Source of the DNA: Ophelia neglecta | Lineage: Eukaryota | Direction: 5' to 3' | Assembly (NCBI GenBank): GCA_965285935.1 | Contig: OZ260666.1 | Location: 50,592,001-50,656,000, forward strand | DNA: 64,000 nucleotides | Program-made: the position numbers and the translations under genes | Notes under the pieces: generated by a model | What the model was told of the DNA's origin: nothing | The model's input: the letters and a program-made list of their open reading frames with translations, nothing else | The model's database searches: none | Part shown: positions 3,897-31,200 of the stretch, one piece after another | Position numbering within the stretch: the stretch's first letter is position 1 | Layout of the letters: each line of letters begins with the position of its first letter

Positions 3897-4201
3897 TTAA
3901 AATTTCATGGGAGCCAACTTAGGCGTGGTTGACATTTTGCGCGGGGTGCCGCTACTGTTTCTGGGGGAAGGTGTGCCACGCGACGCAGGTGACCTTGACC
4001 TCTGACTATTTGGCGTTCTGCTTCCCGTGGGCGTTTGTCGTCCTGTTCCGGTGGGCGTTGAGCGTCCATTAGTGGGCGTGGTGCTCCCATTGGATGGCCC
4101 TGTGGCCCCGCGTGGTTTAGGGGTGCTCGTGACTTTGCGAGATTTCGGCGTATCAGTATGGGCACCCGGAAAGGCACTTGCTCGGCGAGGGGTGCTGGTG
4201 G
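3897..4201 (-). CDS. MACF1: Spectraplakin last coding exon, basic S/T-P-rich tail
   Basis: ctgttttttag acceptor, phase 1; [10 protein letters not shown]...[16 protein letters not shown]. Confidence 0.88.
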
Positions 4202-7200
4202 CTAAAAAACAGAAAAACAAAACATTATTGAATGATATTTTCTATGTTACAAATAAGGAACTTACAAAGATGGCTATTTATGCGTATCAATTTGCCAAAC
4301 CGTTCAAGTCAACAAGAAAGGAATTCTCGAAGACGTGGTCTCATTTTTTGTGAGTTTACCTGCTCACTAACAAAGAATCAATACATATTCACTGCTAAAA
4401 TTGAAAACATACATAATCAGATTTAAGTAAAAGCCGACATAGTGTAGTTTGTTGTTAGTGTGGATGCACATGCTAGCAAGCTGTTTTGTACGTGCAACTG
4501 ATGAAGCAATGTTGTAGCAGGCTTTCATATAATTCATGGCAAATACTTCTTAAATATGCATTAAAGGCACCGGTGGAAGTTTGTGTTTTTACAACTCCTG
4601 GTCTACATGAAATACCGACACAATAAATGATGGTAGGATAACAGCAATACAAAAAGCATTGGTGACAATCTAGGTAATAAACATAATAATACAAGGTTTG
4701 GTAACTTTTCATTATAAAAACAAAAAAGGTAACTTGTCAAATTGTGAAACAAAACATGGCAGAAAACTATAAAAGCGTTAAAAATTGGTGCGCAAATTAA
4801 CTAGGACTCCGAATGAGAGCTTTCATGTGCAGCAGGCTTTTGTGTTTGACATCATTGGTTGAGCTCACCCAATGACACAATATATGGCAGGCTTCTAAAG
4901 ACTGATATGAAACGAATTTCACTCATGACATAAATTGCGAAGGGGACGGGATGTTTATGAGTAAGAATTTATTTAGTATTCAGAGGTAACAAGTTACTGC
5001 TGCACAGAACTGAAACAAAACATTTTTATGCGAGGGGAAAAGGTACCAGGTCCCAAAACCAACGATCTAGACTACCAATATATATATTTGTGTGACACAA
5101 TGGCGAAAGAATACGATTACCTGAAAAAAACGAAAAAAAACCGAGAGTACGAACATTTAAGGCAAGCTTCACTGAGTTCTACTGAGTTGATTGGATATAG
5201 GGTGCAAGGCACAGCTATAGGAGGAGCATTGGGTTGAGAGTGACTTCACCCATCCCTCTTAATGGCAGACGACCAGATCCATACATTGAATGGAAAGGTC
5301 GCCATAATGACAACACATGACGTCACAAAAGCAATGTACCTACCCCCAGTCGAAGACAAATTTGACCAAGACTTGGCCATTTGTGTGTTCTTTTTGCCGG
5401 CCAGCGTCCCGCGAGGGGGCGGCATTTGGGTCCTTCCTGTGGACGCTAAACTACTGGTACTACCTGATAGTTTGGCGCTAAGTGCTGGAAATAATTTGGA
5501 ACGAACGAAGAAGAGGTTATTTCAGACCTCAACACCTTTCAACACGTTATCTACCTTGATCGCCTACACATCTACTAAACTTTGAAAAGACACTCATTGT
5601 ATCGTTTCCATATTTAGCCAGATGTGCAGGCTCCCTACATAATTATGCCTCATCAGTTGAAATATGTGAAAAATGCGCTATAGATTAGTAGAACAAATGC
5701 TGGATTAATATGATACAAGTTAAGGTGTTTTTACCTTAACTTTTTAAAGCTGCATTATCAAAACATGCTTCAATTAATGGACAGAATAATATATTATATA
5801 ATTAAATTTAATCACAATTAATTAAATAGAGTTAATATCATACAAATGCAAAAAATGCAAGACCTGTTTTCTAGTCTAGGATTAATGGGAGAAAAAGTCA
5901 TGCATAAGATGAAAACAAACAGGAAGTATAATACCAAACCTAGGTATTAACATCTAATTTATCAGGTAAGTGGGGAACGACATTGAAGGGAATTGGTGGC
6001 GTGTCTGTGCCTCGGTATAATAGGCCATGTTGAAAGGAACGAATCCAGGATTGAGTAGAAGATTAGCAGTATGGTTAGGAGTGTGTGAAACAGGCATTTT
6101 CTTCAAATGTCTGTTGGTCACCCAACGCCTAACTTTGTGAAATGCCAGGAATAGTTAGAAAGTAGTCGTAAGTGTAGTCTTTTCTATCTATTGATGTCAA
6201 CGTGTGTTAGATGGCGATTCAGATGACTTTTTTACCTGAGGGAGATCCGCCATTATCGACCGAGCCTCTGGCGACTCGGTTTGGATTGGGGGTGCTCATT
6301 CTACGATTGGCAGGGGAGAAGGCAACCCGGGATTGAGCTGCCCCTTCGGGCAAAATGAACTGTTCCCGTAACTCCGTATTTGTTCTTCCTTTAGCTAGAA
6401 GGTGGATGAAACATGCATAGACATTAACTATACAGCCTTTTACCAGAAATCCCAGGGAAAACACAAGGAACACACCCAAAAGAAAATAAATATACATGTA
6501 TCTACCATTTCACCAAGCTCGACCCAAGGGTATGAAATGCGTGTGTACAGACCATTCACTTAATAAACCGTCGCGCTTGGCGGCAAGAACGTTGGCAACA
6601 TCTCAATATTCTTAATCGAAGGTTTTCATTGCGAATTTGTAATATCGTGTTGTGCAGAAGGCATCATTCTCTCATGCGATTAATGCATACTAAGGCTCGG
6701 CCAGATCATGGTTTATATAATGATAAACCATATAGACTGAGATCCTTACAGTAGTTCTTGACCCGAGCCCACAGTTGCCAATACCTTAACCAGAGCTCAG
6801 ATCTGGCATACTCACCCATCGCCGCCATTCCTCGAGCTTTATGAGGCCAGAAAACAACACGGAATGCAATAGAAATGTGCCTAATACAGTACTAAACTTA
6901 AACTTCATTGACCCTTCCATGCAACATAAATGGATGACTTGCAACCTTGAGTTTCACTGTGCTTAGGCTGATAACGGTAACGGGCATCACCAAGATACAA
7001 AATACACGTGTTCGAATTCAGTAGTACAACCCTGTTCAATTTTTTTTGGCGAGTGTTGTACTGGTGCATACGTTATACGTAAGGAGATCACGTATATGGC
7101 CCATGCCATATCTAGCATAAAATACCAAAGCTTTATGTGAGAATAAAATGATAGAAACCCGCAGTTAAACGGAATAAATGACACTGTATTATAGTAACAC

Positions 7201-19200: not shown

Positions 19201-22200
19201 GAACACATATAGACCATTATGACCAGAACAAATAAAACAAAAATAAATTAAGGAACACGCCATGATGGGATCCAAAAAAGAATAAACTCAATAAAGTAGC
19301 GTGATTATATGTATGGTGAAGTTCTTTGAGGTGAGACAAACCTTTAGTTCTTCGATCTGAATGCGTACAGATCTCGGATCAGCTGACACTGGCGACATGT
19401 TGGAGAGTTTCTGCTCGGCTTTAGGTAGCCATGATGAGATAGTCTGTAGCAAAGGACACGATGAGACACGACACACAGGAAACAACTTAACTATCGAGGG
19501 CACTTAACATACTTATATCTAATACACACTTATGGTTACTGTTGGTGGGATGGTCCTTTACGTTGCAAAACATATATAAAATATGGACCAAACAAGAAAA
19601 ACCTCCATGATTAGAAATGCATCCGTGTATGAAACCCCCACGTATGATAACACACGATAATACAGTGAACTTAGCCCAAGAAACATACCTGGAGAACCTG
19701 GTCGAATTTCTGAGCCCTGTCTAAAGCAGTTTCGAGCTCCTCGTCTCTGTCTTGGATACTGTCGTGGATCTCTTCCAACATGTTATCAACATCCTACACA
19801 ATAAATATAATACAAGGTCACCGGTGACATGCAGATACAAGGTGAGTATATGAACAATCTTGGTGGTTGCTTTAGAGCAAGGTGCGATTGAAGCAACCGC
19901 GATATGATGAGGGTCTTCTCACCTCGAGATGTTTCTGTATTTCCATGCGACCAGGCACCCCACATAGAGAATTGAGGTGTTCCGCCGTCTTCCTGGCCTC
20001 AGAGATGGGATACTCGGCACGGTTCAGATCATCCTTGATTTGCTTTATAAATAAATAACATCAAATACAGCCTACATCCCTTACTATACCCTTTTAAGTG
20101 CGATTTCGATCAGTTTAATTTAAAACTGTGAAATATAAAGTAAAATCGATTTATCTAAGCTGGGTATACGTAAGACCTATCTATACCTCCAGTTCACGTT
20201 GTTGTTCCTGGATTGTCTGCGGATCGACTCCAGGTGAATCTTGTGACATTAGGTTGTCCTGTATGTCCCGGAGTGCCTGTACGGCGTCTTGCCAGTCGTG
20301 GCCGAACTTCTCTGCCACCCCGAGGGCCTCCTCCAAATCCCCCGAGCGAGCACGGGTCTGCTGGCGAATGTTTTCCTGGAGGGTATCCATATCCTGCAGC
20401 TTGGAGCGGAGGTCCTGGACTGTAAAGACAATTAAAATAGTACACGCTTTACATCTTCACGTACAATATAGTCAAGTTAACGCGTGTGTTCTATATATTT
20501 CCTAGGCCTATTTAAAACAGGCGATGATATCTGATGCGAAATACACGTTAGTCATAGTGTGTTGATGTTGAAAGTTTACGTACAATCTTCAATGTGTTCA
20601 GGAGGTTCTCCTTCTAATATACGACCAACTGCATCTTTGGTGTTCTGTATTGCCATCTGTCTTCTCTCTAGGTCATCAACAACACCCTGCAATAAACGAC
20701 AAAAGAGTCCACATCACCTCTGTATTGATATATACTCTGAAAATATGTATACGTGTTGGGAAATATGCTTACATTATTTTCGGATATCTGTTCCTTCAGA
20801 GCATGTGTATTGGCTGCAATAGGATCTGCATGCTCGACCTGATCGTTCAGGTAGTGTAGTTCTTCCAGCAGTCCATCGAGGGTGTCTCCGACCTACAAAT
20901 ACCATTCTTGTTTATAATTGGTCCAGCCTTCCATATTTCATTACCTCATATCATAGTGAATGCTTCTCTTAATGAAATTCGATTGCCGGCCAGACAACTT
21001 GATCATTTAAACACGTTCATCTTCAAGTATTCACCTCCGATGTGCTGCTTCTGAAGGCCTCGTCCAACTGGTTGAGTTTCTCGCGGACGGCTCCCTTCAC
21101 CTCGTCATACTTGGCATGGACATTGTCCACATCCTCCTTGATGTCACTCGCGTCCTCGTCAGTACACATTTCCATCAGCTCGTGTCCAGTGCTCACTAGG
21201 TCCTCAAGTAATGGCTTGTGGTCTTCTATGATACGCTGTGTGGTCTGAAAGGTAGCATGTAACATCGATAGTTAGTCTTAAAGTGCAGGCCAAACAGGTG
21301 TTTCGAAAGTGCAAAGTTAACGAATAATAAGATAGACAAAAACATCCACCTTTATCGTAAATATATGTGTGTAAAGGAGATGAGTAAGTACAGCGGAAAG
21401 GTAAGGAATAGATGGTGTAAGGAGAATAGTGAAGATCTTGTTTGGGGTAGAATTCCTGTTAGTAAATTTGTATTCAAACTAACTCCTGGAGGACCCTAGC
21501 TACATCTATCTAAACCCCCAATTGCTCCTTAATCCAGACTTATTATATTGTGACAATGCTAATGCTATCCTAAATAATCGTGATTGACACTTGTTGAGAC
21601 ATTCTTGGGCAGCCTAAATGATGATGGTTGGAATTGTTTTATACATTCTCGGGCTTATACCTGAAGGTACTCCTCGAATATTTTTGCGAGTCTTTCAGTT
21701 TCTTCATCTGGTTCGTCTTTTCCTTCTAATATAATACCAAGTGACTCGCTCACCACACTGCCTCCACTTGTCAGCCTCGGTCTGGTAGGAAACGTAAAGT
21801 AACCAAGGCTCCCCTGTGAGTGGCTGAGATCCATGAAAGGTTCAGGACTCCTTGGGTGAGAGCAACCCTCGTCCAGACTTGAGTCATTCCAGCGTACTTC
21901 TGAGAATACATCAGAATGGCGGGACCTGATTGGAATTCGTGAGGGTTTTGTAGGAGTGTTTGGAGGAGCCGACAGTTCAGGACCGTCTAGAGCTAAATGT
22001 AAAGCTGTAGGTATGTTTAAACTAGCGGTTTGAACGGCTGTACTGAGATCAACATATAAAACCATATCGTCATTTCGGGCCCTGGTTATGTTTTCAATAT
22101 TGCTGTTGGGTGAATTTCTAAATCTATGCCGTTGTGATGTGGGAATACGGGATGGTTTAGATATCGGCCAATTATTCTTTTTATCACCAGATCCAGCTTC

Positions 22201-25200
22201 TTTATCCTTGTGACAAGATTCTGTTGTTTTGGGGGGATCCAATGAGTTATTTTTGTCGAGATCAATCTGCAAATTCGCGGGTGCATTCACTAATTCTGGC
22301 TTTACTGCAATGCATACATTGACATTAACCGCTTCTTGTTCAAGTTGGTAATACGAATTGTTAGTCCGAATAGGATTTTCCTCGTCTTCATTAATACCCA
22401 GACCCATTGTATCAGGATTTTTAATAACAACCGCTGGTAGTATCAGAGGAAAAACCTCTTTCTTGGCTATATTCTTGTAAGTAGCTTCAGCGACTAGTAA
22501 ACTGCTTTGAGTACTCTTTTTATTGATTTCAGTCATACCCTCCTTCCTGTCAAAATGGTTTTCTTGAACACCTAAGTAACTATCCGTGCCCAAGAGCTGG
22601 TGTATCATTTGAAATGTTTCGATCGTACTTTCTGTGCTCTTAGGGAGAAGATATACTGCATCATCTTTGTCACTATTGTCAGTGTTGAGATCGTCCACAT
22701 TTCGGCCACCGCGAAACGACGGATTTTCATTTTCTGCTATGTAAGTGGAATTTTTTCCCGTGGCCTCGTCACCAACGACATTTACCGTTTCAAGTACAAT
22801 ATGTTTATATTGGGAGTCAAAATCGTCTCCGATGATCGCTTCCATATTTTTTGTTGCATGCAAAATATCCTGTATATGACTGTTCATTATTTCCACTCCT
22901 TGTTCCATAACGACCACAGCACCAATGTCTAGGTTGACAGGTAAGGGTTGGTTAGCGTTTGAATGGATTCGGTCAGAATCATCAGATTTGACCTGAGCAA
23001 CAGGGGCAGCAATTCCAACGTCGCTTTCTCGTCGTTCGTCGTTTTCGTTATAGGTAGTTATGCGTGCTTTATCAGTGAATGATTCATCGAGTCCCTCAAT
23101 ACCCAAGATGGTAACTTCGATGTTCTCTCCCTCATCCAAAATGTTACTACCTTCCTCATTATCAGATTCATTTTCACAACTTTCTTCATTACTATAATGA
23201 TCATCATTGAGTTTACTCGCTTTTAGTGCTGACGAGATATTGGTAAGGCAACCGTTGCCGTTTGTTATATTTGGCTCAGTAAATGCAAATCTATCACACG
23301 TTTCAATCGACCCGGCCAAGATTTTGTCACCAAGAGCAGCCACCAACTTATCGGCTTCACGAAAGCCCGAAAGAAATTGGCCGCCTGATGGAACAAATTG
23401 ACGTTCATCCTCTAGTTCTGCGTCTACAGCAGGCCGCTCTGCCTGCACCACAAACATAGCATTATTATGATCATTACAGTTATAGTTTAGTTTCTGATCT
23501 CTTTCATTGCCATGAAGATATTCGTCCATTACAACATGCGTTGTTGCGCCTTTCTTAGATTCACCATTTTCCATAGAATCAGAGTAGTCACCTTTCCTAC
23601 CGTCGGTTTTGTTTCCGTGGCAGATGGCGTTGTTTGATAATTCTAATTTCGAGACATCGAGTTCTTCTGTTCCTAACCCAACATGATATTCCTCCGACAT
23701 ACCTGATATGTCGATGTTTTCTGATTGTGGTTTCGTCTTTGCTTCAGGCTGACATCCATAAAGAAGAATGTGATCAGGTTCGTCATTCTCGGTAGAATCA
23801 GCGTAGTCAACATTCCAACTGTCGGTCTTGTTTTCGTGACTGTCGGTCTTGTTTTCGTAATAATCTCTCTTTAATAATTGTAATGGAGAAATATCATGTT
23901 CTTCAGTTCATACTCCAACTAGACATTCCTCCGACATGCTTGGAATGTCAACGCTTCCTGAATGTGGCTTAGTCGATAATTCAGGTTTACCTTCATAGAC
24001 AGAAATAGTATTAATGCTTGATTTATAACCGTTATTGTGTTCCCCATACTGGCTGTCACTGCCCTGTTTTCCATGGGAACCAAAGGAGGCTCCCTCTGAG
24101 AGGTTTTTAATATTAGGAACAGGGGATAAGACATCTATTTCGCCAGAAAAGACATCATTGTTGTCCTCATAACACACATCACAAGCTTGTCCTATCGCAT
24201 TCATTCTATGTGTTTTATTCTCATCATCGTATACACTGCTGTCTTTGTCGTTGAATCTACTAGCCACATTCATGTCACGTAAAACGCCTACCTCCCGTTC
24301 CTCATTATCTTCACTGGAAGCGGGCAGTCCATCACTGTCGTGTCTCAAATCACATTCTGATTGCGGGTTAAAATATGCTGCAGTTGTTCGTTCTCCTGGT
24401 TTTTCTTGGAGGACTGTGATAATGCTCTTCTGCTTTTCGTTATGCGTACCCCCTATATGATCACAGCTCTGGTTTGGTACCTCCTGTATTAGCATGTTAT
24501 CTGTTATCACATCTGTCTGTTTGTCAAGAACTGTCAGCAAACTAAGTGATGAAGTTTTGATCCCAGCTACTAACTTTCTTTCGTAAGGTTCAGTAACTGG
24601 CTTTTCCACTTCACTGGTGTTCATATCCTCCACTTCTTCAGAAGAAACAAGATCCATCGCCGTTTTTAATCTATAAGCAGCATTCTGGTGGTCTCTCTCA
24701 TACTTCTCGGGGCTCCTAGAACCATCAATGCCATTGTCCTCGTCGTCATCGTTCCCACTGTCATGTTTGAAGGCTATGTTGCAGTAGTCATTCAATGCAT
24801 TGCGGTATGCATCATTTGAGGGCGAATTATTTAGCGTTGCATCTACTCGTTCATTTTGGCCATCTGACACATCAAGTACATTTAAGTTTACTTTACTTCT
24901 CTTCTCAGAAGTAGTTTTCGAATGCGTTACATGCTGAACATCAATATTTTGTACAAACTCTTCAACAGGTGAACTACTATTGTTTTGTTTTTCGCCAGAG
25001 TTAGTAAAGCGATCTCCGTAATTATCTTCTATTTTTAATTGACCATCTTGAATAGCACTATCAAAACAGACACCAGTTGAGCATATATCTATGTCACTCG
25101 GTGAGGTTGTCTTTTCTACAAACACGCAAATATTTACACATTCGTCAGTACTATCTTTTTCCAATGTTTCATTGGACTCGGAAATAATTGTTCCACTTAT

Positions 25201-28200
25201 ACGAAATTCATTTTCATGTTGTTTAATACCACGATGGTTTTCAGTCTTTATCTGATTTTTGACGATATCTAGTTCGACCACATCTAATTCATTTAATTTG
25301 TCCTTCATGCCTCTATCTACGCAATCATCAAAAATATTGCTGGCCTCAACGTTCTTAGCTAGTGCTGTTTTAACCTTAAAATTATTGCAACATTCATCCA
25401 CTGAATAGCTTGACTTTTTGTTATATTTTATTTTGGTATCTACATTACAAAATACTTCATATCCTAATGCGATATCTGGTGAATTATTCTGTTGGCTTTC
25501 GCCATGTCTGTCGTAGCTAACGATCGGTGGTGGAGGATAAGTTTCATTGTCTTTTTCCGTTGAGCCAACATCCATTTTGTCCTCAATCACATCCCTGAAA
25601 ACAGAGGAACCATAGGAAGATGCAGCGGAACCTTCAAAACTGGATTCAATTTTATCGGTCGTTTTAATGATGTTTGTATCTTGCTGATCTGAGCACTCAC
25701 TGTAAGGTGATTCTGGAAGATCAGCACGGGTTGTATCTCTGCTAAACGACGATCGACTGTCTACCGGGTCTCCAACCAAAATGCCTTCAGCTACTACTGC
25801 CTCGGTGCTTGCCGCCATCCTATCCCTAAGCTGGCCCTCTTCGGCGAAGGCGACATTGTGCTCATTCTGCTGTTGGCCCATACTACTGTTTTGAGCTTCT
25901 GTAATAGTTCGACTGCCGGTGTCAGGCAATAGATCGCGGCTGGCATCATATGCCATGACGTTTTCTTGCTTCTTTTCATGCACGTACTTACAATTATCCC
26001 TTTCTCTTTCATTATGGCCAGTATGGACACTCACCAGATTGTTTGGCAATTGAATGGGTTTAGACTTAAATTCCAATGGCATAAATTGAAATGACTCTAT
26101 ACCACGGTTGTCTTCAGCCTCTCGGGTCACTCCATTGAGCTCCTTGGCACTTTCCAACGAAAGAGTATCCATCTGCCCACCTGTTGTTATCTCTACATAC
26201 ATTACTTCTGCCGTATATTCGATAGTGTTGGAAGGGGATTGGTAGGGTAGAGGGTCTTCAGCTTTAGTTATGTGCGATAATATTTCAGCATCACCAAGGC
26301 GAGTACTAGGTTCAACTTGGGAGTCACTAACAATGACTTCTTTACTCCCCACACGAGATGTTAAAATGGGCTCGAGTACCTCGGGCTCTGTTAACTCCAA
26401 GGTGGAGGCGTCTATCAGTTGGTAGTGACTCGTGCTCTCCATGGTCCTATACCTGGCAGATGGCAGATTGTCTAGATCATAGTTGAAGGTCCACTTATCA
26501 AGCAACTTCCGATGGTCATCTCTGTCTTGCGTTTGTGAAATCACGGGGTCACCTTCTTCGTAATCAGAATCGCTAGAAGAACAGAAAGCGAGACCATCAA
26601 TGTGAAGCAGCTCCGACACCATTTTAACAGCTTCAGATTTAGTGTGTGCTTTAACATCAATTTCAAGCGGCATATTCTCAGCATCTTCACTTACATTTGA
26701 GGCTGCTTTATTTGAGCAAAGTTCCGGCTTGCGTCCGCTCTGCTTACTTTTCAAGGTCAAGTGACATATATCATCCTCCAAGAAATCACTACTTTCAGCA
26801 TCAGATATTTCTGGATCGTCGTCGCCTTCATGATCAATTGCCAGCTCCTCATCGTTGTGGTCATCGACTTCTCTAGCGATCACGTTGGAACCATGAAGGT
26901 CACTTTGTGATCTGTGAGAGTCCCAGAAAAGAGTTGTGTCTGCAAAAGGTTCAGCATGCAAAGACGTCAAGGAACGGACTCTTCTCTTTCTCCGCCCGCG
27001 TGAATGAAATCCCAGACGAGGGTAGGAGTAATTTCTGGGCAGTGTTTTCTCCATTACGAAATCTGGTGATGGCAAAGAGCGCCTTGATCCATTCGAGGAA
27101 TCAAGAGAGGGTTTGCGGTGTCGTGAAAAAGACAGAGGATCATCCGAGTCGACTAGCTCAGGCGTGCTGCCTCTCCCTCGATATATGTGAGAGTGGCCCA
27201 TCATGGACCATTTTACGGCCCCAAAACGGTCGGCTACTGTTATATCATTTGCGCACTCATACTCAGTGCGGCTGTTGTTGAAGGCTTCAAGGTCATCCAA
27301 TTCTCTCTGCAGCCGCTCTATGCGGCTAATATGTCCTTCAATGTCACAAGCGTTCAGATCTGGCAATGACAGGCGTTTCCGCGGTGATGCTTTCTGGAGG
27401 GGCAGTTCTGTATCAGGTACCTCCTGCACTCCTGGATCAGGTACGCGCTGCTCCTCGTCGTGGGGCAGCTTTCGCTTCCCGAAAGGGCCACATTTGATCA
27501 GGAATATTAAGTAAACTACGGAGATCATGGCGATTACTGCATATACATCTAAAGTCATCGATACCGTTAGCATATTGGTGTCAAACATGCTGATGTTATG
27601 ATTCCGAAAGTGTTGATGCCTGCTCTATCCTTATGAAGAGAAGAAATCCGTTTGTTGGCATCGGACACCTGTGGGGCACTATGTCTGCGCGCCCACGCAC
27701 ACACCATCATTCACACCAAGGGCTGAAAAAAAGTTGACTACGTGGATCTGTCTGACGATGGCTGGTCATGCAACCGTAGTCTCGTTCTGAACAACACAAC
27801 CTGCTACAGCTAAGCAGTTTTATAATTGAAAAACCAATAAAATTCAATATTGAACAATTGGGTAGCAGACTGTGAAGTATACGATGGCCTGAAACAACAG
27901 CTGGTGACTAGGAAACCAAGCATACCCTACAGTTTACATATGGGCTGTAGAATATAATGTGAGAACACAGCCATTTAATGCATTGGTGAAATACTTTTTG
28001 TTAGTACAACAAATGGCTACATCAATTGTTTGCCTTCTTCTGTATAAATGCGATGGTCCATTATTCAGATTAACCAGTACACAATTGCCTTAAAGGCCCG
28101 ATCTACCAACAGTTGTAAATCCATTATACGCTAGGTATCTTCAGATATCTCTATCGAATAGACTGCAGCAGATTTTCTAGATATAATCAATATTTACTGC

Positions 28201-31200
28201 AGCCAAAGTATTCAATTGTCTGATTGGTTAAACTGACACAATGCTGCCTGAGTGCAGGGAACATATGGCGGACTGTATGGAAGTATGTCGAGTGGCAACG
28301 GGATAACAGAGCATATGAGAGGCACAAAATAACTCATTACATACAATATAACGTACAGTTCATCCATCAACATCAAGACAGAGCAATAATCCGTTTCCTT
28401 ATTTAGGCTATTGTTTTTTAATCATCCAATAGGAGGTCGGGAAAGAGAGGGAGGGACATAGCAGTCGTTTATAGGTATTACGAGAATATCATCTACCTGG
28501 GCATTATTAATTGAAAAGATTAATTTCATTCAAATAGATACAGTTGGCAAAGTTGGCGATAGCTAGGAAAGGTGAAAGGAGTATGAAAAAGGCTTTAGCA
28601 GTAGTATCATCTAAAATATTACAAACCTAAATGATGCTATAATGTTAGAGTGAAGTATACTGCTCATCATTATCTACACAAAGTAGTGAAAAATAAATTG
28701 AAATTACCTTAGCGTTGTCCTGTTGTTTTTTCACTTGTTCGGTGTTGCCATCTGCCGGCACATCCAAAGACTCGATTTCAGCCTCGATCTCCCCGAGCCA
28801 GGACTGGAGGTCGCCGTGGGTCTCACTAAAGTGCGAGGCCAGCGGAAGTGCCTCCTCCAGCAGCTCAAGCCGCTCGAGACTCAGCTTACAAACCAGGTCG
28901 GCCTGGTTTCTGATAGTGTCCAGTTTGTTCTTGATGTCGTCTGCCTCCTCGTTTGTCGTCTCTCTCAGCATCTTGTTACATTTGTCGATGGTGTCGTTGA
29001 CGGCTCGTTTCTTGGCTTCCAGGTCCTCATGGAAGGACTTGTGGTCTCGGAGCTGTACCGCCAAGGTCTCCGGGTCGGTGGAGATGGGCTCTGCCGTATT
29101 AATATCATTCTCAGCCTTGTCTAGGTACTTTAACAAATCATCTATCTCGCGCAGAGCCTGCAAGCAAAATATGATTAGGCGATTTATGATAGAGAACACA
29201 ACGTAATTAAAAAAAAACCCTTAATAATATTGTTACTCGCATACGTCAATTCAAAATACGCACATGTTAAAATTAATGTAATTGTCCCCATGACATATTT
29301 TATCTAGAATGTTTGCTGATCACGAGCACTTACAGCGAAGGAGATCATCTGTACGAGGAGCTCCGTGAGGTCATGCCATTTGGCCTGCACGTCAGCCAGC
29401 GTCTCCCGAAGGCGGTTCTTGTCTCCCGTGCTAGGATCGTCTATCAGCTCCTTGCCAATCTTTTTAATTGTCTTCAGATCTATTTCCTTTGCCTTTTTCT
29501 GTCTGTAAAGATTTCTCGATTATTTCAAATGCAAAATGAGGTTTACAAATTTGCAATTAGAATGACATTTTGGTTAGATGGCATATTGCATTTTACAAGG
29601 TCCTGTTTCTGGTAATCGCAGTTCGTCTCAAAATTACGGTATTTGCTGAATACATAGATAAATTCTTGGAGCATAGCAAATGTATTCGTTTAATAAAAGT
29701 TATGGCTTAAATCAATTGAGCGACGCAGCTATTTCCTACGTCTGTCTAATACCAGAAGCTGCTACTCACTTGTACAGATTTTCTATTTTCTGCTTGAGGC
29801 TGGAATGGTCAAAGTCGGTGCTCTCCCGCTTGAGGCTACTGACGGCGTTGGTGAGCCACGACTCCAGCTGTTGGACGTTGCCATGAAGGGTTCCCAGCTT
29901 CCCGACAACCTCATCAAGCTCCTGTCCTCGGTCCTGGCTGCGGGTTATCAATAGGTCGTACCTAGAGGGAGTAAGTGACATGCTGGATAAAACTTAAACA
30001 TTTCACTGGGCGCTTAATTACATAAATGGAAGAATTTGAATCGCGGTGGCTTAGTAATAATTGCTAATTACCTAGCATTATATATAAATTGAGTTTGAGA
30101 GAAGCTGTAGACTACATAGCATTATATTAACCATCGGGTACTGACCTGTCGAGCAGCTCTCCGGCCCTGTCGTCTGCGCCATGAGTCTGACTCTGTTCCA
30201 CCACCGAGTCGATCTGGTTCCGCTGATGCTCGATATCACCTGTAATCACGCGGTGCGCTTGGATCTGTTCATTGAGTTTAGATCGGTCCAAACTCACCGG
30301 GTCCATATTCTCAAACATACCCTCGGTCTCTGACACCCACGCCAGTAGATTGTTCAGGTTATAGTTCACATCTTTTGATTGGAGGACTGCTGCGTTCAGT
30401 TTGTGCTGTTTATCTACTACACCTTCCTGTATCCTGTCGAAATGACCCTGGGCAGTGTCAATGGTATTTTGAATCTCCTGAGCTTTCGGTGAATCCCGGC
30501 AATCCAGTTCTTCCAGAATCTGCACAAGTTCGTGGCCAACATTTTGCAGGTCTTCCACACATTTTCCCTGCACAATGGCCTCGCCAGTGATGCTTTTAAG
30601 TTCCTCTAGCTGCTTCTTAGGGTCGAGACCCGGAGCCAACTCCGCACTACACGAGTTGATTCTCTCCTCGAGAGATGGCAGTGTCTGCTCCAGCTGCCCC
30701 TTCAGCTGGTTGTACTGTTTGTTTTTGGAGGCGGTGTCCGTTAGTTTCGCCATAAGATCCTCGCAGTCAGACAGTACCGCCTTGAACTTGTCGTTGGCAG
30801 CCTCGAGCTCCTTCTCCACAACGTCTTCCGGATCCTGCAACTTAGCGCCACCTACTTCCTTTGGCAAATGTCGGCGGTATGCGTCCGATTCTTTGGCATA
30901 TTCCTTGAAAATTGAAAGAGTGTTGATGTATTCTTCAGCGAAAATGAGTTAGAAAAGTGAACAGCTCATTCAAAATACAAGATAACGTCTCACTCAAACA
31001 AAGCACAAAAGGATATACAATAGAAGGTTATCAGCATCATTTCAGTATCTTTATTTTAAAATGAACATCGACTGTTTTACTACAACTTATCCCCTTAGCT
31101 AAATTGACTATGGAATAAGATACTAAGCTTGCGATTTCCCCTGTGATAGGGGCATGGGTGGCCCACATATCACATCTATTTCTGGTCTGTCGGCTATCAA

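What the first reader, a model, noticed from the sequence alone, without database searches (positions are those of the whole stretch)
23890..23940. Single in-frame TGA splits the 5.9-kb frame and aligns with a Gly codon in the repeat copy
Seen: GTT GGA GTA TGA ACT GAA GAA (TGA 23910..23908) versus GTT GGG TTA GGA ACA GAA GAA in the next repeat (GGA 23673..23671), a single G>T difference. The frame stays open on both sides. Possible explanations: (a) assembly error or a nonsense allele; (b) stop readthrough, although TGA-A is not the favoured TGA-CTAG context; (c) splicing that removes it, using GGA|gtatga (23913) to a phase-0 CAG at 23749 (165-nt exitron) or directly to 21244; (d) a real split into a 1,226-aa TM protein and a soluble form starting MSEEY at 23700. 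Options b-d would act as a switch coupling or uncoupling the membrane anchor from the microtubule-binding rod.
Basis: partly seen in the sequence, partly recalled or inferred. Interest (0 to 1): 0.75.

Follow-up and report, generated by a model that had tools for sequence, protein, structure and literature searches.

The report
Lone stop codon splitting giant exon
A single stop codon really does interrupt a 5.9-kb coding block inside a worm cytoskeletal-linker gene, and it is most likely an ordinary, recent nonsense mutation in a fast-changing floppy spacer rather than a regulatory switch, though no RNA data exist to settle it.

Summary
The minus-strand frame 27588..21658 (1,977 codons) has one stop, TGA at 23910..23908. 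It lies in copy 1 of a 237-nt tandem duplication and aligns with GGA (23673..23671) in copy 2.

It is not an assembly slip. Read-derived contigs from two of three DNA runs of one sample match the window at that codon; the third run is undetermined.

The only homologue found, P0001, is one uninterrupted 1,312-aa ORF. It matches both the conserved N-block upstream of the TGA and the conserved SxIP block downstream. The ancestral state is therefore one continuous frame.

The stop sits in a spacer with no amino-acid constraint: 33 non-synonymous to 5 synonymous differences. In this ORF 4.3% of point changes create stops.

None of the bypass ideas gained support:
- The context is UGA-A, with no 3' structure.
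- No SECIS was found.

No RNA run was found, so zygosity and bypass remain open. Best reading: a young nonsense codon that is not recoded.

The scan also noted a hidden membrane-anchor first exon in another spectraplakin gene of this genome.

The parts
23908..23910 (-). In-frame TGA, codon 1227 of the 1,977-codon frame
   Evidence: The same letters stand in contigs of runs X1 (record 2) and X2 (record 11).
23911..27588 (-). N piece, 1,226 codons: N-terminal hydrophobic anchor, a conserved block (about codons 1-430), then an acidic disordered spacer
   Evidence: Residues 1-531 match P0001 1-536 at 39% identity, E 5e-86. No Pfam family.
21658..23907 (-). C piece, 750 codons with no stop: spacer, two KPSRIP (SxIP-type) motifs and a conserved end ...[14 protein letters not shown]
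   Evidence: Residues 632-750 match P0001 1188-1311 at 44% identity, E 1e-22. The whole-library search gives only P0001.
23720..23960 (-). Copy 1 of the 237-nt tandem duplication; it carries the TGA
23483..23719 (-). Copy 2 of the duplication; GGA (Gly) at 23673..23671 is the codon aligned with the TGA
23818..23858 (-). Perfect in-frame 21-nt tandem repeat (two copies) inside copy 1: a sign of ongoing slippage in the spacer
   Evidence: 100% matches, score 82
23749..23913 (-). TGTCAG|CCT). It is in frame but not better than chance.
21655..21663 (-). End of the giant frame: CAG|GTA TAA. This is at once a possible phase-0 splice donor (G at 21660) and an immediate stop codon.
   Evidence: Gene-own donor score 2.1 bits.
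21023..21244 (-). Next spectrin-repeat exon. Its acceptor ...CCTTTCAG|ACC at 21244 is phase 0, the same phase as the upstream canonical donor AAG|GTAATT (G at 28707).
   Evidence: Pfam Spectrin, E 9.4e-5.
23885..23932 (-). Local RNA hairpin with the TGA in its apical loop. Weak significance; no role shown.
   Evidence: z -3.0. Re-run z -2.6; 5 of 293 windows of the ORF reach z <= -2.5.

Best explanation
The TGA is a genuine germline nonsense codon of recent origin. It most likely arose as a G-to-T change of a Gly-type codon, in copy 1 of a lineage-specific tandem duplication. It is not recoded.

**Where it sits.** It lies in the long acidic spacer of a lineage-restricted giant coding block. 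That block has an N-terminal membrane anchor, a conserved N-block, a hypervariable spacer, SxIP motifs and a conserved end. The block lies in an intron between two spectrin-repeat exons of an annelid spectraplakin gene.

**Why a stop here is unsurprising.** The amino-acid sequence of the spacer is not under detectable constraint. Historically only its open frame has been kept. Stop-creating changes therefore arise there often, and this individual carries one.

**Expected consequence (inferred, not shown).**
- The allele yields at most a 1,226-aa anchored fragment lacking the SxIP/C-terminal block.
- If the block is spliced onto the downstream spectrin exons, the message would be exposed to nonsense-mediated decay.
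- The canonical spectraplakin isoforms that skip the block would be untouched.

**Still open.** Whether the allele is still segregating or has just been fixed (the first step of losing this isoform).
For: **Shown**
1. The stop is in the reads. Contig record 2 of X1 (23470-24234) has 2 differences from the window, both listed, at 23808 and 23813. Record 11 of X2 (21028-25924) has 29 differences, all 29 listed, none at 23908-23910.
2. The frame was ancestrally continuous. The only homologue, P0001, is one ORF of 1,312 aa covering both conserved blocks.
3. The stop is young. The 750 codons after it carry no further stop, against 48 expected. The C-block still matches P0001 at 44% identity, including PSRIPIRSR.
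4. The spacer is unconstrained at the amino-acid level. Of the 40 listed differences among contigs, 38 fall in the frame. They split 33 non-synonymous to 5 synonymous (20:2 upstream of the TGA, 13:3 downstream), against a site ratio of 3.7:1.
5. Of all possible point changes in the frame, 769 of 17,784 (4.3%) make a stop.
6. The region is single copy in the 762-Mb assembly.

**Inferred**
- With about 50 haplotype differences in this block, about 2 nonsense differences would be expected without selection, so one is unremarkable.
- At 4.3% stop-creating changes plus frameshifting indels (indel rate recalled, not measured), 2,250 unconstrained bases stay open with probability above 0.05 only up to roughly 1% divergence. 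That is about the level of the differences seen among the contigs (about 0.6-1%).
Against: - Zygosity is unknown. Both informative contig sets (X1, X2) carry TGA. From overlaps among the three runs I estimate that a heterozygous site shows the window's letter in both X1 and X2 about one time in three. This favours homozygous or fixed about 3:1, and a fixed stop is what a functional bypass would predict.
- X3's contig has 14 differences, of which only 7 were listed (19 rows of the table were not shown), so an alternative letter there cannot be excluded or shown.
- All three runs are one sample, possibly the one the assembly came from. There is no population evidence.
- The spacer codon cannot be aligned with P0001, so the ancestral codon is inferred from the paralogous copy only.
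- The historic maintenance of a 1,977-codon frame means stops are selected against. That argues against a common loss-of-function allele.
- No RNA, ribosome or peptide data could be examined.
Confidence: 0.62

Rival explanations
1. The TGA is removed by splicing. Possible routes are the reader's 165-nt interval 23913..23749, the long jump 23913 to 21244, or another GT-AG pair inside the block. One version is a coding stretch recently turned into an intron after the stop arose (PTC-driven intronization).
For: - A GT lies directly 5' of the stop (GGA|GTATGA). An in-frame CAG acceptor with a moderate pyrimidine run lies 165 nt on.
- With a matrix built from 20 presumed donors of this gene, the donor scores 0.7 bits. 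That is inside the range of those donors (leave-one-out -3.0 to 5.6; 3 of 20 lower).
- The idea that PTCs promote intronization is in print (Catania and Lynch 2008, as cited in PMC4484396, passage read).
- TGA stands in both informative contig sets, which is compatible with fixation.
Against: - The donor ranks 74 of 288 GT sites (generic matrix, -2.2 bits) or 32 of 288 (gene-own matrix).
- The acceptor ranks 42 of 429 AG sites.
- The pair ranks 248 of 2,622 in-frame, stop-removing pairs. Such a pair is therefore expected by chance.
- The interval is homologous in frame to exonic copy 2 and is otherwise open, so it is not an old intron.
- P0001 needs no intron.
- It is not an exitron by definition, because it holds a stop.
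- The contigs laid were genomic and show no junctions.
Confidence: 0.13
2. Programmed or leaky readthrough of the UGA (near-cognate decoding) makes the full-length protein at a useful level. The stop then sets the ratio of the truncated anchor to the full-length form.
For: - 750 open codons and a conserved C-block follow the stop.
- UGA is the leakiest stop codon (recalled).
- A hairpin encloses the stop (z -3.0).
Against: - The context is UGA-A, not the stimulatory UGA-CUAG. A purine at +4 is the base preferred after stop codons in eukaryotic genomes (PMC9272376, passages read).
- The 136 nt 3' of the stop fold no better than shuffles (z -0.40; 70 of 200 shuffles fold as well).
- The hairpin has the stop in its loop, not 5' of the stem. 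It is not exceptional: 5 of 293 windows of the ORF reach z <= -2.5.
- The homologue has no stop between the blocks, so there is no conserved readthrough site.
- Known readthrough adds C-terminal extensions at conserved stops (recalled). It does not interrupt an ancestral ORF in the middle.
Confidence: 0.07
3. The block is now functionally split. It makes a 1,226-aa membrane protein ending at the TGA, plus a separate soluble product from the downstream frame. The second product could start at the ATG at 23700 from an internal promoter, or come from use of the 3' part as a cassette exon of the canonical transcript.
For: - An ATG with a purine at -3 stands 69 codons after the stop.
- The downstream frame is intact and its end is conserved.
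- Several phase-0 acceptor-like sites lie 3' of the TGA.
Against: - Reinitiation after a 1,226-codon ORF is not expected in eukaryotes (established knowledge).
- No promoter evidence could be obtained.
- The homologue keeps both blocks in one ORF.
- The ATG at 23700 is itself part of the strongest donor-like site of the block, CAG|GTATGT, and of the repeat unit (MSEE in both copies). It needs no special explanation.
Confidence: 0.07
4. Sequencing or assembly error: the true codon is a sense codon.
For: It differs by a single base from the paralogous Gly codon. All data come from one sample.
Against: Contigs built independently from two runs, at word depths of about 30 and 12, agree with the window at all three bases. 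No indel is listed anywhere in 21001-27000 (table 4).
Confidence: 0.03
5. Other recoding: selenocysteine insertion at UGA, or A-to-I editing of UGA to UGG.
For: The codon is UGA. A local hairpin exists.
Against: - No Rfam family, hence no SECIS, reaches its gathering score anywhere in the 64-kb window, which includes the gene's 3' end.
- The paralogous codon is Gly, not Cys.
- In the predicted hairpin the A of UGA is unpaired in the apical loop, not in a duplex.
Confidence: 0.02

Closest known systems
Premature termination codon (nonsense allele) in an isoform-specific, intrinsically disordered exon
   Same: - A single-base stop in an otherwise intact, ancestrally continuous frame.
- It is present in the reads.
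- The downstream frame has not yet decayed.
- It affects only the isoform that uses this block.
   Different: Allele frequency and zygosity are unknown. The gene block itself is uncharacterised and has a single known homologue.
Exitrons (Marquez et al. 2015, PMC4484396) and PTC-driven intronization (Catania and Lynch 2008, seen only as cited there)
   Same: A GT..AG interval with a length that is a multiple of 3, inside a coding exon and derived from coding sequence.
   Different: Exitrons by definition hold no stop codon; this interval holds the TGA at its positions +4 to +6. The splice sites are no better than chance matches, and there is no RNA evidence.
Programmed UGA readthrough (UGA-CUAG class in mammals; conserved readthrough stops in Drosophila, PMC3840789 seen as abstract only)
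   Same: UGA followed by a long open, partly conserved frame.
   Different: - The context is UGA-A.
- There is no 3' structure.
- The stop is absent from the homologue.
- The stop is internal to an ancestral ORF rather than at its end.
Dystonin-a2 (BPAG1-a2), the spectraplakin isoform with an N-terminal transmembrane domain (PMC3279385, passages read)
   Same: An alternative N-terminus that would tether a spectraplakin rod and microtubule-binding tail to a membrane.
   Different: - In dystonin-a2 the anchor is a short 5' exon ahead of the actin-binding and plakin domains.
- Here the anchor heads a 5.9-kb block deep in the rod region and would bypass the SH3, plectin and upstream spectrin exons.
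- There is no sequence similarity.
- The splice to the rod is unproven, because the block also ends in its own stop.

Membership tests
Nonsense (PTC) allele | The stop codon is present in primary sequence data, not only in the assembly | tested here: met
   X1 record 2 and X2 record 11 equal the window at 23908-23910. All of their differences are accounted for elsewhere.
Nonsense (PTC) allele | The frame is continuous in relatives (the ancestral state is one ORF) | tested here: met
   P0001 is one 1,312-aa ORF matching both flanking conserved blocks. The exact codon is not alignable.
Nonsense (PTC) allele | A sense allele exists at the same site in the population or on the other haplotype | tested here: inconclusive
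   X3's contig has 7 unlisted differences, and 19 table rows were not shown. Only one sample is available.
Exitron | The interval lies inside a protein-coding exon and has GT..AG ends | tested here: met
   23913 GT ... AG 23749, 165 nt
Exitron | It contains no stop codon when retained | tested here: not met
   The TGA occupies +4..+6 of the interval. Definition taken from PMC4484396.
Exitron | Splicing is observed in RNA | not testable with these tools
   No RNA run was listed. The contigs laid are genomic and show no joints.
Exitron | The splice signals stand out from chance GT/AG sites | tested here: not met
   Donor rank 74 of 288 (generic matrix) or 32 of 288 (gene-own matrix). Acceptor rank 42 of 429. 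Pair rank 248 of 2,622.
Programmed stop-codon readthrough | A leaky 3' context (C at +4; CUAG) | tested here: not met
   The text is TGA ACT GAA. Context rule taken from PMC9272376.
Programmed stop-codon readthrough | A stimulatory RNA structure shortly 3' of the stop | tested here: not met
   z -0.40 for 23915..23780
Programmed stop-codon readthrough | The stop codon is conserved in relatives, with coding constraint beyond it | tested here: not met
   P0001 has no stop between the two blocks. Only one relative is available.
Selenoprotein (UGA = Sec) | A SECIS element in the transcript | tested here: not met
   0 Rfam matches at gathering score in the whole window
Spectraplakin (host gene) | Plakin SH3, plectin repeats, spectrin repeats, EF-hands and a GAS2/GAR domain in one oriented gene | tested here: met
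   Pfam matches, exon by exon on the minus strand:
- SH3_10, E 4e-13
- Plectin, E 3e-46
- Spectrin on both sides of the block, E 9e-13 and 9e-5
- EF-hand_1, E 3e-5, below the curated cut-off
- GAS2, E 1e-6
Spectraplakin isoform using the giant block as an alternative first exon | The block is spliced in frame to the downstream spectrin exon | tested here: inconclusive
   The phase fits: CAG|GT at 21660 and the acceptor at 21244 are both phase 0, as is the canonical donor at 28707. However, the same GTA is followed at once by TAA, and P0001 also stops two codons after the equivalent point. There is no RNA. The joined model was not built or searched.

The most novel reading that the evidence does not exclude
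The stop is fixed and functionally bypassed. A stretch of coding sequence that acquired a PTC is being spliced out through the weak GT created right beside it (intronization in statu nascendi), or the UGA is read through. The cell would then tune the ratio of a truncated membrane-anchored fragment to a full-length form that carries the EB-binding SxIP motifs and perhaps the spectraplakin rod and GAR tail.
Probability: 0.15. Interest if true: 0.6.

Novelty: already known. Interest (0 to 1): 0.2.

Why it matters
If the reading is right, the TGA is an ordinary loss-of-function variant. Its main practical use is as a warning for annotators: the two ORFs (1,226 and 750 aa) belong to one ancestral coding block and should not be modelled as two genes. 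The reference individual may also not represent the species at this site.

It also gives a small, clean example of a disordered spacer in which only the open frame, not the residues, is under selection.

If the minority reading were right (a bypassed stop), it would be a rare natural case of a PTC being rescued by new splicing or readthrough in a giant exon.

The more interesting object is the block itself, a membrane-anchored, SxIP-bearing unit inside a spectraplakin rod intron. That is the subject of other findings on this window.

Tried and rejected
- **More relatives.** I looked for further homologues to align the codon, and found only P0001:
  - N piece search
  - two-sequence profile
  - whole-library search with the C piece (1 protein at E <= 0.001 among 1.84 billion)
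  - JGI metagenome contigs (170 pattern matches, none confirmed)
  - GTDB genome contigs (128 pattern matches, none confirmed)
  - ESM Atlas (no usable hit)
  - PDB sequences (nothing below E 0.99)
  - Pfam on both pieces (nothing meaningful)
- **P0001's origin.** It has no name or accession on record. I therefore could not see whether it too lies in a spectraplakin intron or what follows its stop.
- **Paralogues or alternate haplotigs in the own genome.** None found.
- **RNA evidence.** The single run search (kind 'any') listed three runs, none on record as RNA. Laid on the window they are collinear with the genome, introns included, so they are DNA. The RNA-only look-up was not possible after the cap. 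Other follow-ups on this genome also report no RNA data.
- **Selenocysteine and other RNA families.** 0 matches.
- **Readthrough structure.** Rejected.
- **Hairpin around the stop.** Real but unexceptional.
- **Splice-site scoring.** The gene-own matrix rests on 20 donors chosen automatically as the best GT in the tail of open segments that I took for exons. It therefore leans towards the consensus.
- **Zygosity.** It cannot be read from popped-bubble contigs. My estimate that a heterozygous site would look like the window in both X1 and X2 about one time in three comes from a capture-recapture count made by hand on table 3. That count assumes the unlisted differences of X3 are X3-only.
- **Supplements.** No paper supplement was needed or opened.
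Full report
**1. The observation**

On the minus strand the window reads GTT GGA GTA TGA ACT GAA GAA, with TGA at 23910..23908. Exactly 237 nt downstream it reads GTT GGG TTA GGA ACA GAA GAA, with GGA at 23673..23671.

MAFFT aligns the two 237-nt units at 78% mean column identity, with TGA over GGA. The repeat finder reports the same spacing. A codon-by-codon listing shows the two units in the same frame.

The frame from the ATG at 27588 to 21658 has 1,977 codons and one stop. Shuffles of the same letters carry 124 stops on average (minimum 98 of 500). The two other frames carry 108 and 247.

**2. Context**

The window holds one minus-strand spectraplakin gene. Pfam matches, exon by exon:

| Domain | Position |
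|---|---|
| SH3_10 | 43747-43574 |
| Plectin repeats | 38983-36842 |
| Spectrin repeats | 30948-30130, 29220-28648, 21265-21023, 18303-17893 |
| EF-hand | 9131-8652 |
| GAS2/GAR | 8412-8074 |

- The giant frame sits between two spectrin exons.
- The canonical donor AAG|GTAATT (G at 28707), the block's own CAG|GTATAA (G at 21660) and the acceptor CCTTTCAG|ACC (21244) are all phase 0. Use as an alternative first exon is therefore possible.
- However, the GTA is followed at once by TAA, so the block could equally be a nested single-exon gene. I did not build or search the joined model.
- Neither piece of the block matches any Pfam family, any PDB chain or any ESM-Atlas cluster.
- The block is single copy in the 762-Mb assembly.
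- Earlier notes of the scan call the animal an annelid.

**3. Is the stop real?**

The one run search returned three runs of one sample, none on record as RNA. Laid on 21001-27000, their contigs are collinear with the genome across the 414-nt intron, with no joints and no indels. They are therefore DNA.

- X1 record 2 (23470-24234) has 2 differences from the window. Both are listed, at 23808 and 23813.
- X2 record 11 (21028-25924) has 29 differences. I matched all 29 to listed rows, and none is at 23908-23910.
- Two independently built contig sets, at word depths of about 30 and 12, therefore carry TGA. An assembly or consensus error is very unlikely.
- X3 record 16 has 14 differences, of which only 7 are listed, and 19 rows were not shown. 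X3 is undetermined.

The contigs differ from the window at about 0.6-1% of sites, and both branches of two complex bubbles are kept in all three runs. The sample therefore holds at least two haplotypes.

Simple SNP bubbles appear as one letter per contig, so zygosity at the TGA cannot be read. From the overlaps among runs I estimate by hand that a heterozygous site would show the window's letter in both X1 and X2 about one time in three. The data therefore lean mildly (about 3:1) towards homozygosity. The pattern of differences is also spatially structured in a way I cannot explain (see the items noticed in passing).

**4. The ancestral state**

The N piece (1,226 aa) finds one protein among 5.8 billion: P0001, 1,312 aa, unnamed, E 4e-80. 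A two-sequence profile finds nothing more. The C piece, scored against all 1.84 billion representatives, finds only P0001.

- P0001 residues 1-536 match N-piece residues 1-531 (39%, 220 of 569 columns).
- P0001 residues 1188-1311 match C-piece residues 632-750 (44%, 55 of 125). This stretch includes PPNTPT[KR]PSRIPIRSR and the end TERLAK..EYL[QK]V.
- Between these blocks P0001 has an unalignable acidic spacer of a different length.

In the only known relative, both blocks therefore lie in one uninterrupted ORF that needs no intron. The TGA interrupts what was one frame. The spacer codon itself cannot be aligned, so Gly as the ancestral residue rests on copy 2 alone.

**5. How the spacer evolves**

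Of the 40 listed variable sites, 38 lie in the frame. They split 33 non-synonymous to 5 synonymous (20:2 upstream of the TGA, 13:3 downstream), against 3,864 non-synonymous and 1,044 synonymous sites. This gives a pN/pS of about 1.8, not below neutral.

None of the listed sites falls in codons 197-436 of the conserved N-block. The three in the C-block are one synonymous and two at positions that differ in P0001; at one of them the other allele equals P0001's residue.

The spacer thus shows no constraint on residues, although its openness has been kept over a divergence that erased all similarity. In this frame 769 of 17,784 possible point changes (4.3%) create a stop. With about 50 differences between haplotypes, about two nonsense differences would be expected if stops were not selected against, so a single one is unremarkable.

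Conversely, the 750 codons after the stop are still open (48 stops expected in shuffles, minimum 27 of 2,000). The copies of the duplication differ by 22-28%. The stop is therefore much younger than the duplication. By a rough calculation that uses a recalled indel rate, it is no older than about 1% neutral divergence, which is polymorphism-scale.

**6. Tests of the bypass ideas**

*Splicing.*
- With a generic donor/acceptor matrix (frequencies recalled, used only for ranking), GGA|GTATGA scores -2.2 bits and ranks 74 of 288 GT sites in the block.
- The acceptor ranks 42 of 429 AG sites.
- The pair ranks 248 of 2,622 in-frame GT-AG pairs that would remove the stop without creating another.
- With a matrix built from 20 presumed donors of this gene, the donor scores 0.7 bits. 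That is inside but at the low end of their leave-one-out range (-3.0 to 5.6, median 3.4), and it ranks 32 of 288.
- The interval is in-frame coding sequence homologous to copy 2. It also holds the stop, so it does not meet the published definition of an exitron (PMC4484396).

*Readthrough.*
- The context is UGA-A. The stimulatory motif is CUAG, and purines are the preferred base after stops (PMC9272376).
- The 136 nt after the stop fold no better than shuffles (z -0.40).
- A hairpin (23932-23885) places the stop in its apical loop (z -3.0; -2.6 on re-run). In a scan of 293 windows of the block, 5 reach z <= -2.5. The copy-2 equivalent does not fold (z -0.6). I give the hairpin no weight.

*Selenocysteine.* No Rfam match at gathering score in the whole window.

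*Split gene.* The ATG at 23700 belongs to the repeat unit and to the strongest donor-like site of the block. Nothing else speaks for an internal start.

**7. Verdict**

The most likely reading (0.62) is a genuine, young nonsense codon that is not recoded. It is either a segregating allele carried by the sequenced animal or a just-fixed first step towards losing this block.

| Rival | Probability |
|---|---|
| Removal by splicing | 0.13 |
| Readthrough | 0.07 |
| Functional split | 0.07 |
| Sequencing or assembly error | 0.03 |
| Other recoding | 0.02 |

The consequences for the protein (a truncated anchor without SxIP, and possible NMD if the block is spliced to the rod) are inferred. Nothing here supports a regulatory switch, but nothing excludes one, because no RNA, ribosome, peptide or population data could be examined.

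As a phenomenon this is ordinary. The unusual object is the block itself, which other findings on this window address (s1-739825, s1-740073, s1-740184).

**Papers**
- PMC3279385, PMC4484396 and PMC9272376: passages read.
- PMC3840789, PMC10985678 and the other listed titles: search listing and start of abstract only.
- Catania and Lynch 2008 and Irimia et al. 2008: seen only as cited in PMC4484396.

Noticed in passing
window 23697-23705 (minus strand): The strongest donor-like site of the whole 5.9-kb block is CAG|GTATGT, with G at 23702 (6.9 bits with the gene-own matrix, rank 1 of 288 GT sites). It lies exactly at the boundary of the two repeat copies. It is phase 1 and lies 3' of the TGA, so it cannot remove the stop.
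   Followed up: partly
window 23885-23932 and 23680-23695: The 16 nt at 23900-23885 are 94% complementary to 23695-23680 in copy 2. They also pair locally with 23932-23917, forming a hairpin with the TGA in the loop. The copy-2 counterpart of this stretch is far less complementary. The cluster of differences between the copies here may stem from one templated mutation event rather than independent substitutions.
   Followed up: partly
window 23818-23858: A perfect 21-nt (7-codon) tandem duplication lies inside copy 1. It indicates recent in-frame slippage in the spacer.
   Followed up: no
window 21655-21663; P0001 C-terminus: The giant frame ends CAG|GTA TAA, and P0001 ends ...EYLKVN followed by a stop. 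In both species a donor-like GT and a stop codon nearly coincide. Whether the block is an alternative first exon of the spectraplakin or a nested single-exon gene cannot be decided from the sequence.
   Followed up: partly
window 21001-27000 (contigs of runs X1-X3): The three runs are labelled as one sample, but their contigs differ from the window in a spatially structured way. X3 equals the window at all listed variable sites left of about 23400 and differs at all listed sites right of 23460, plus 12 unlisted differences of its own. This is not what independent bubble popping in one diploid would give. More than two haplotypes or some library effect may be involved.
   Followed up: no
window 26279-27000: None of the 40 listed variable sites falls in the 720 nt laid over the conserved N-block (codons 197-436), although about 5 would be expected at the density of the spacer. 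This is consistent with constraint on that block. The 19 unlisted rows could change this.
   Followed up: no
window 3897-4220 (minus strand): The presumed last coding exon is a Ser/Thr/Pro/Arg/Gly-rich tail with no Pfam match. It resembles in composition the C-terminal microtubule-binding tails of spectraplakins (recalled), and it ends in a stop.
   Followed up: no
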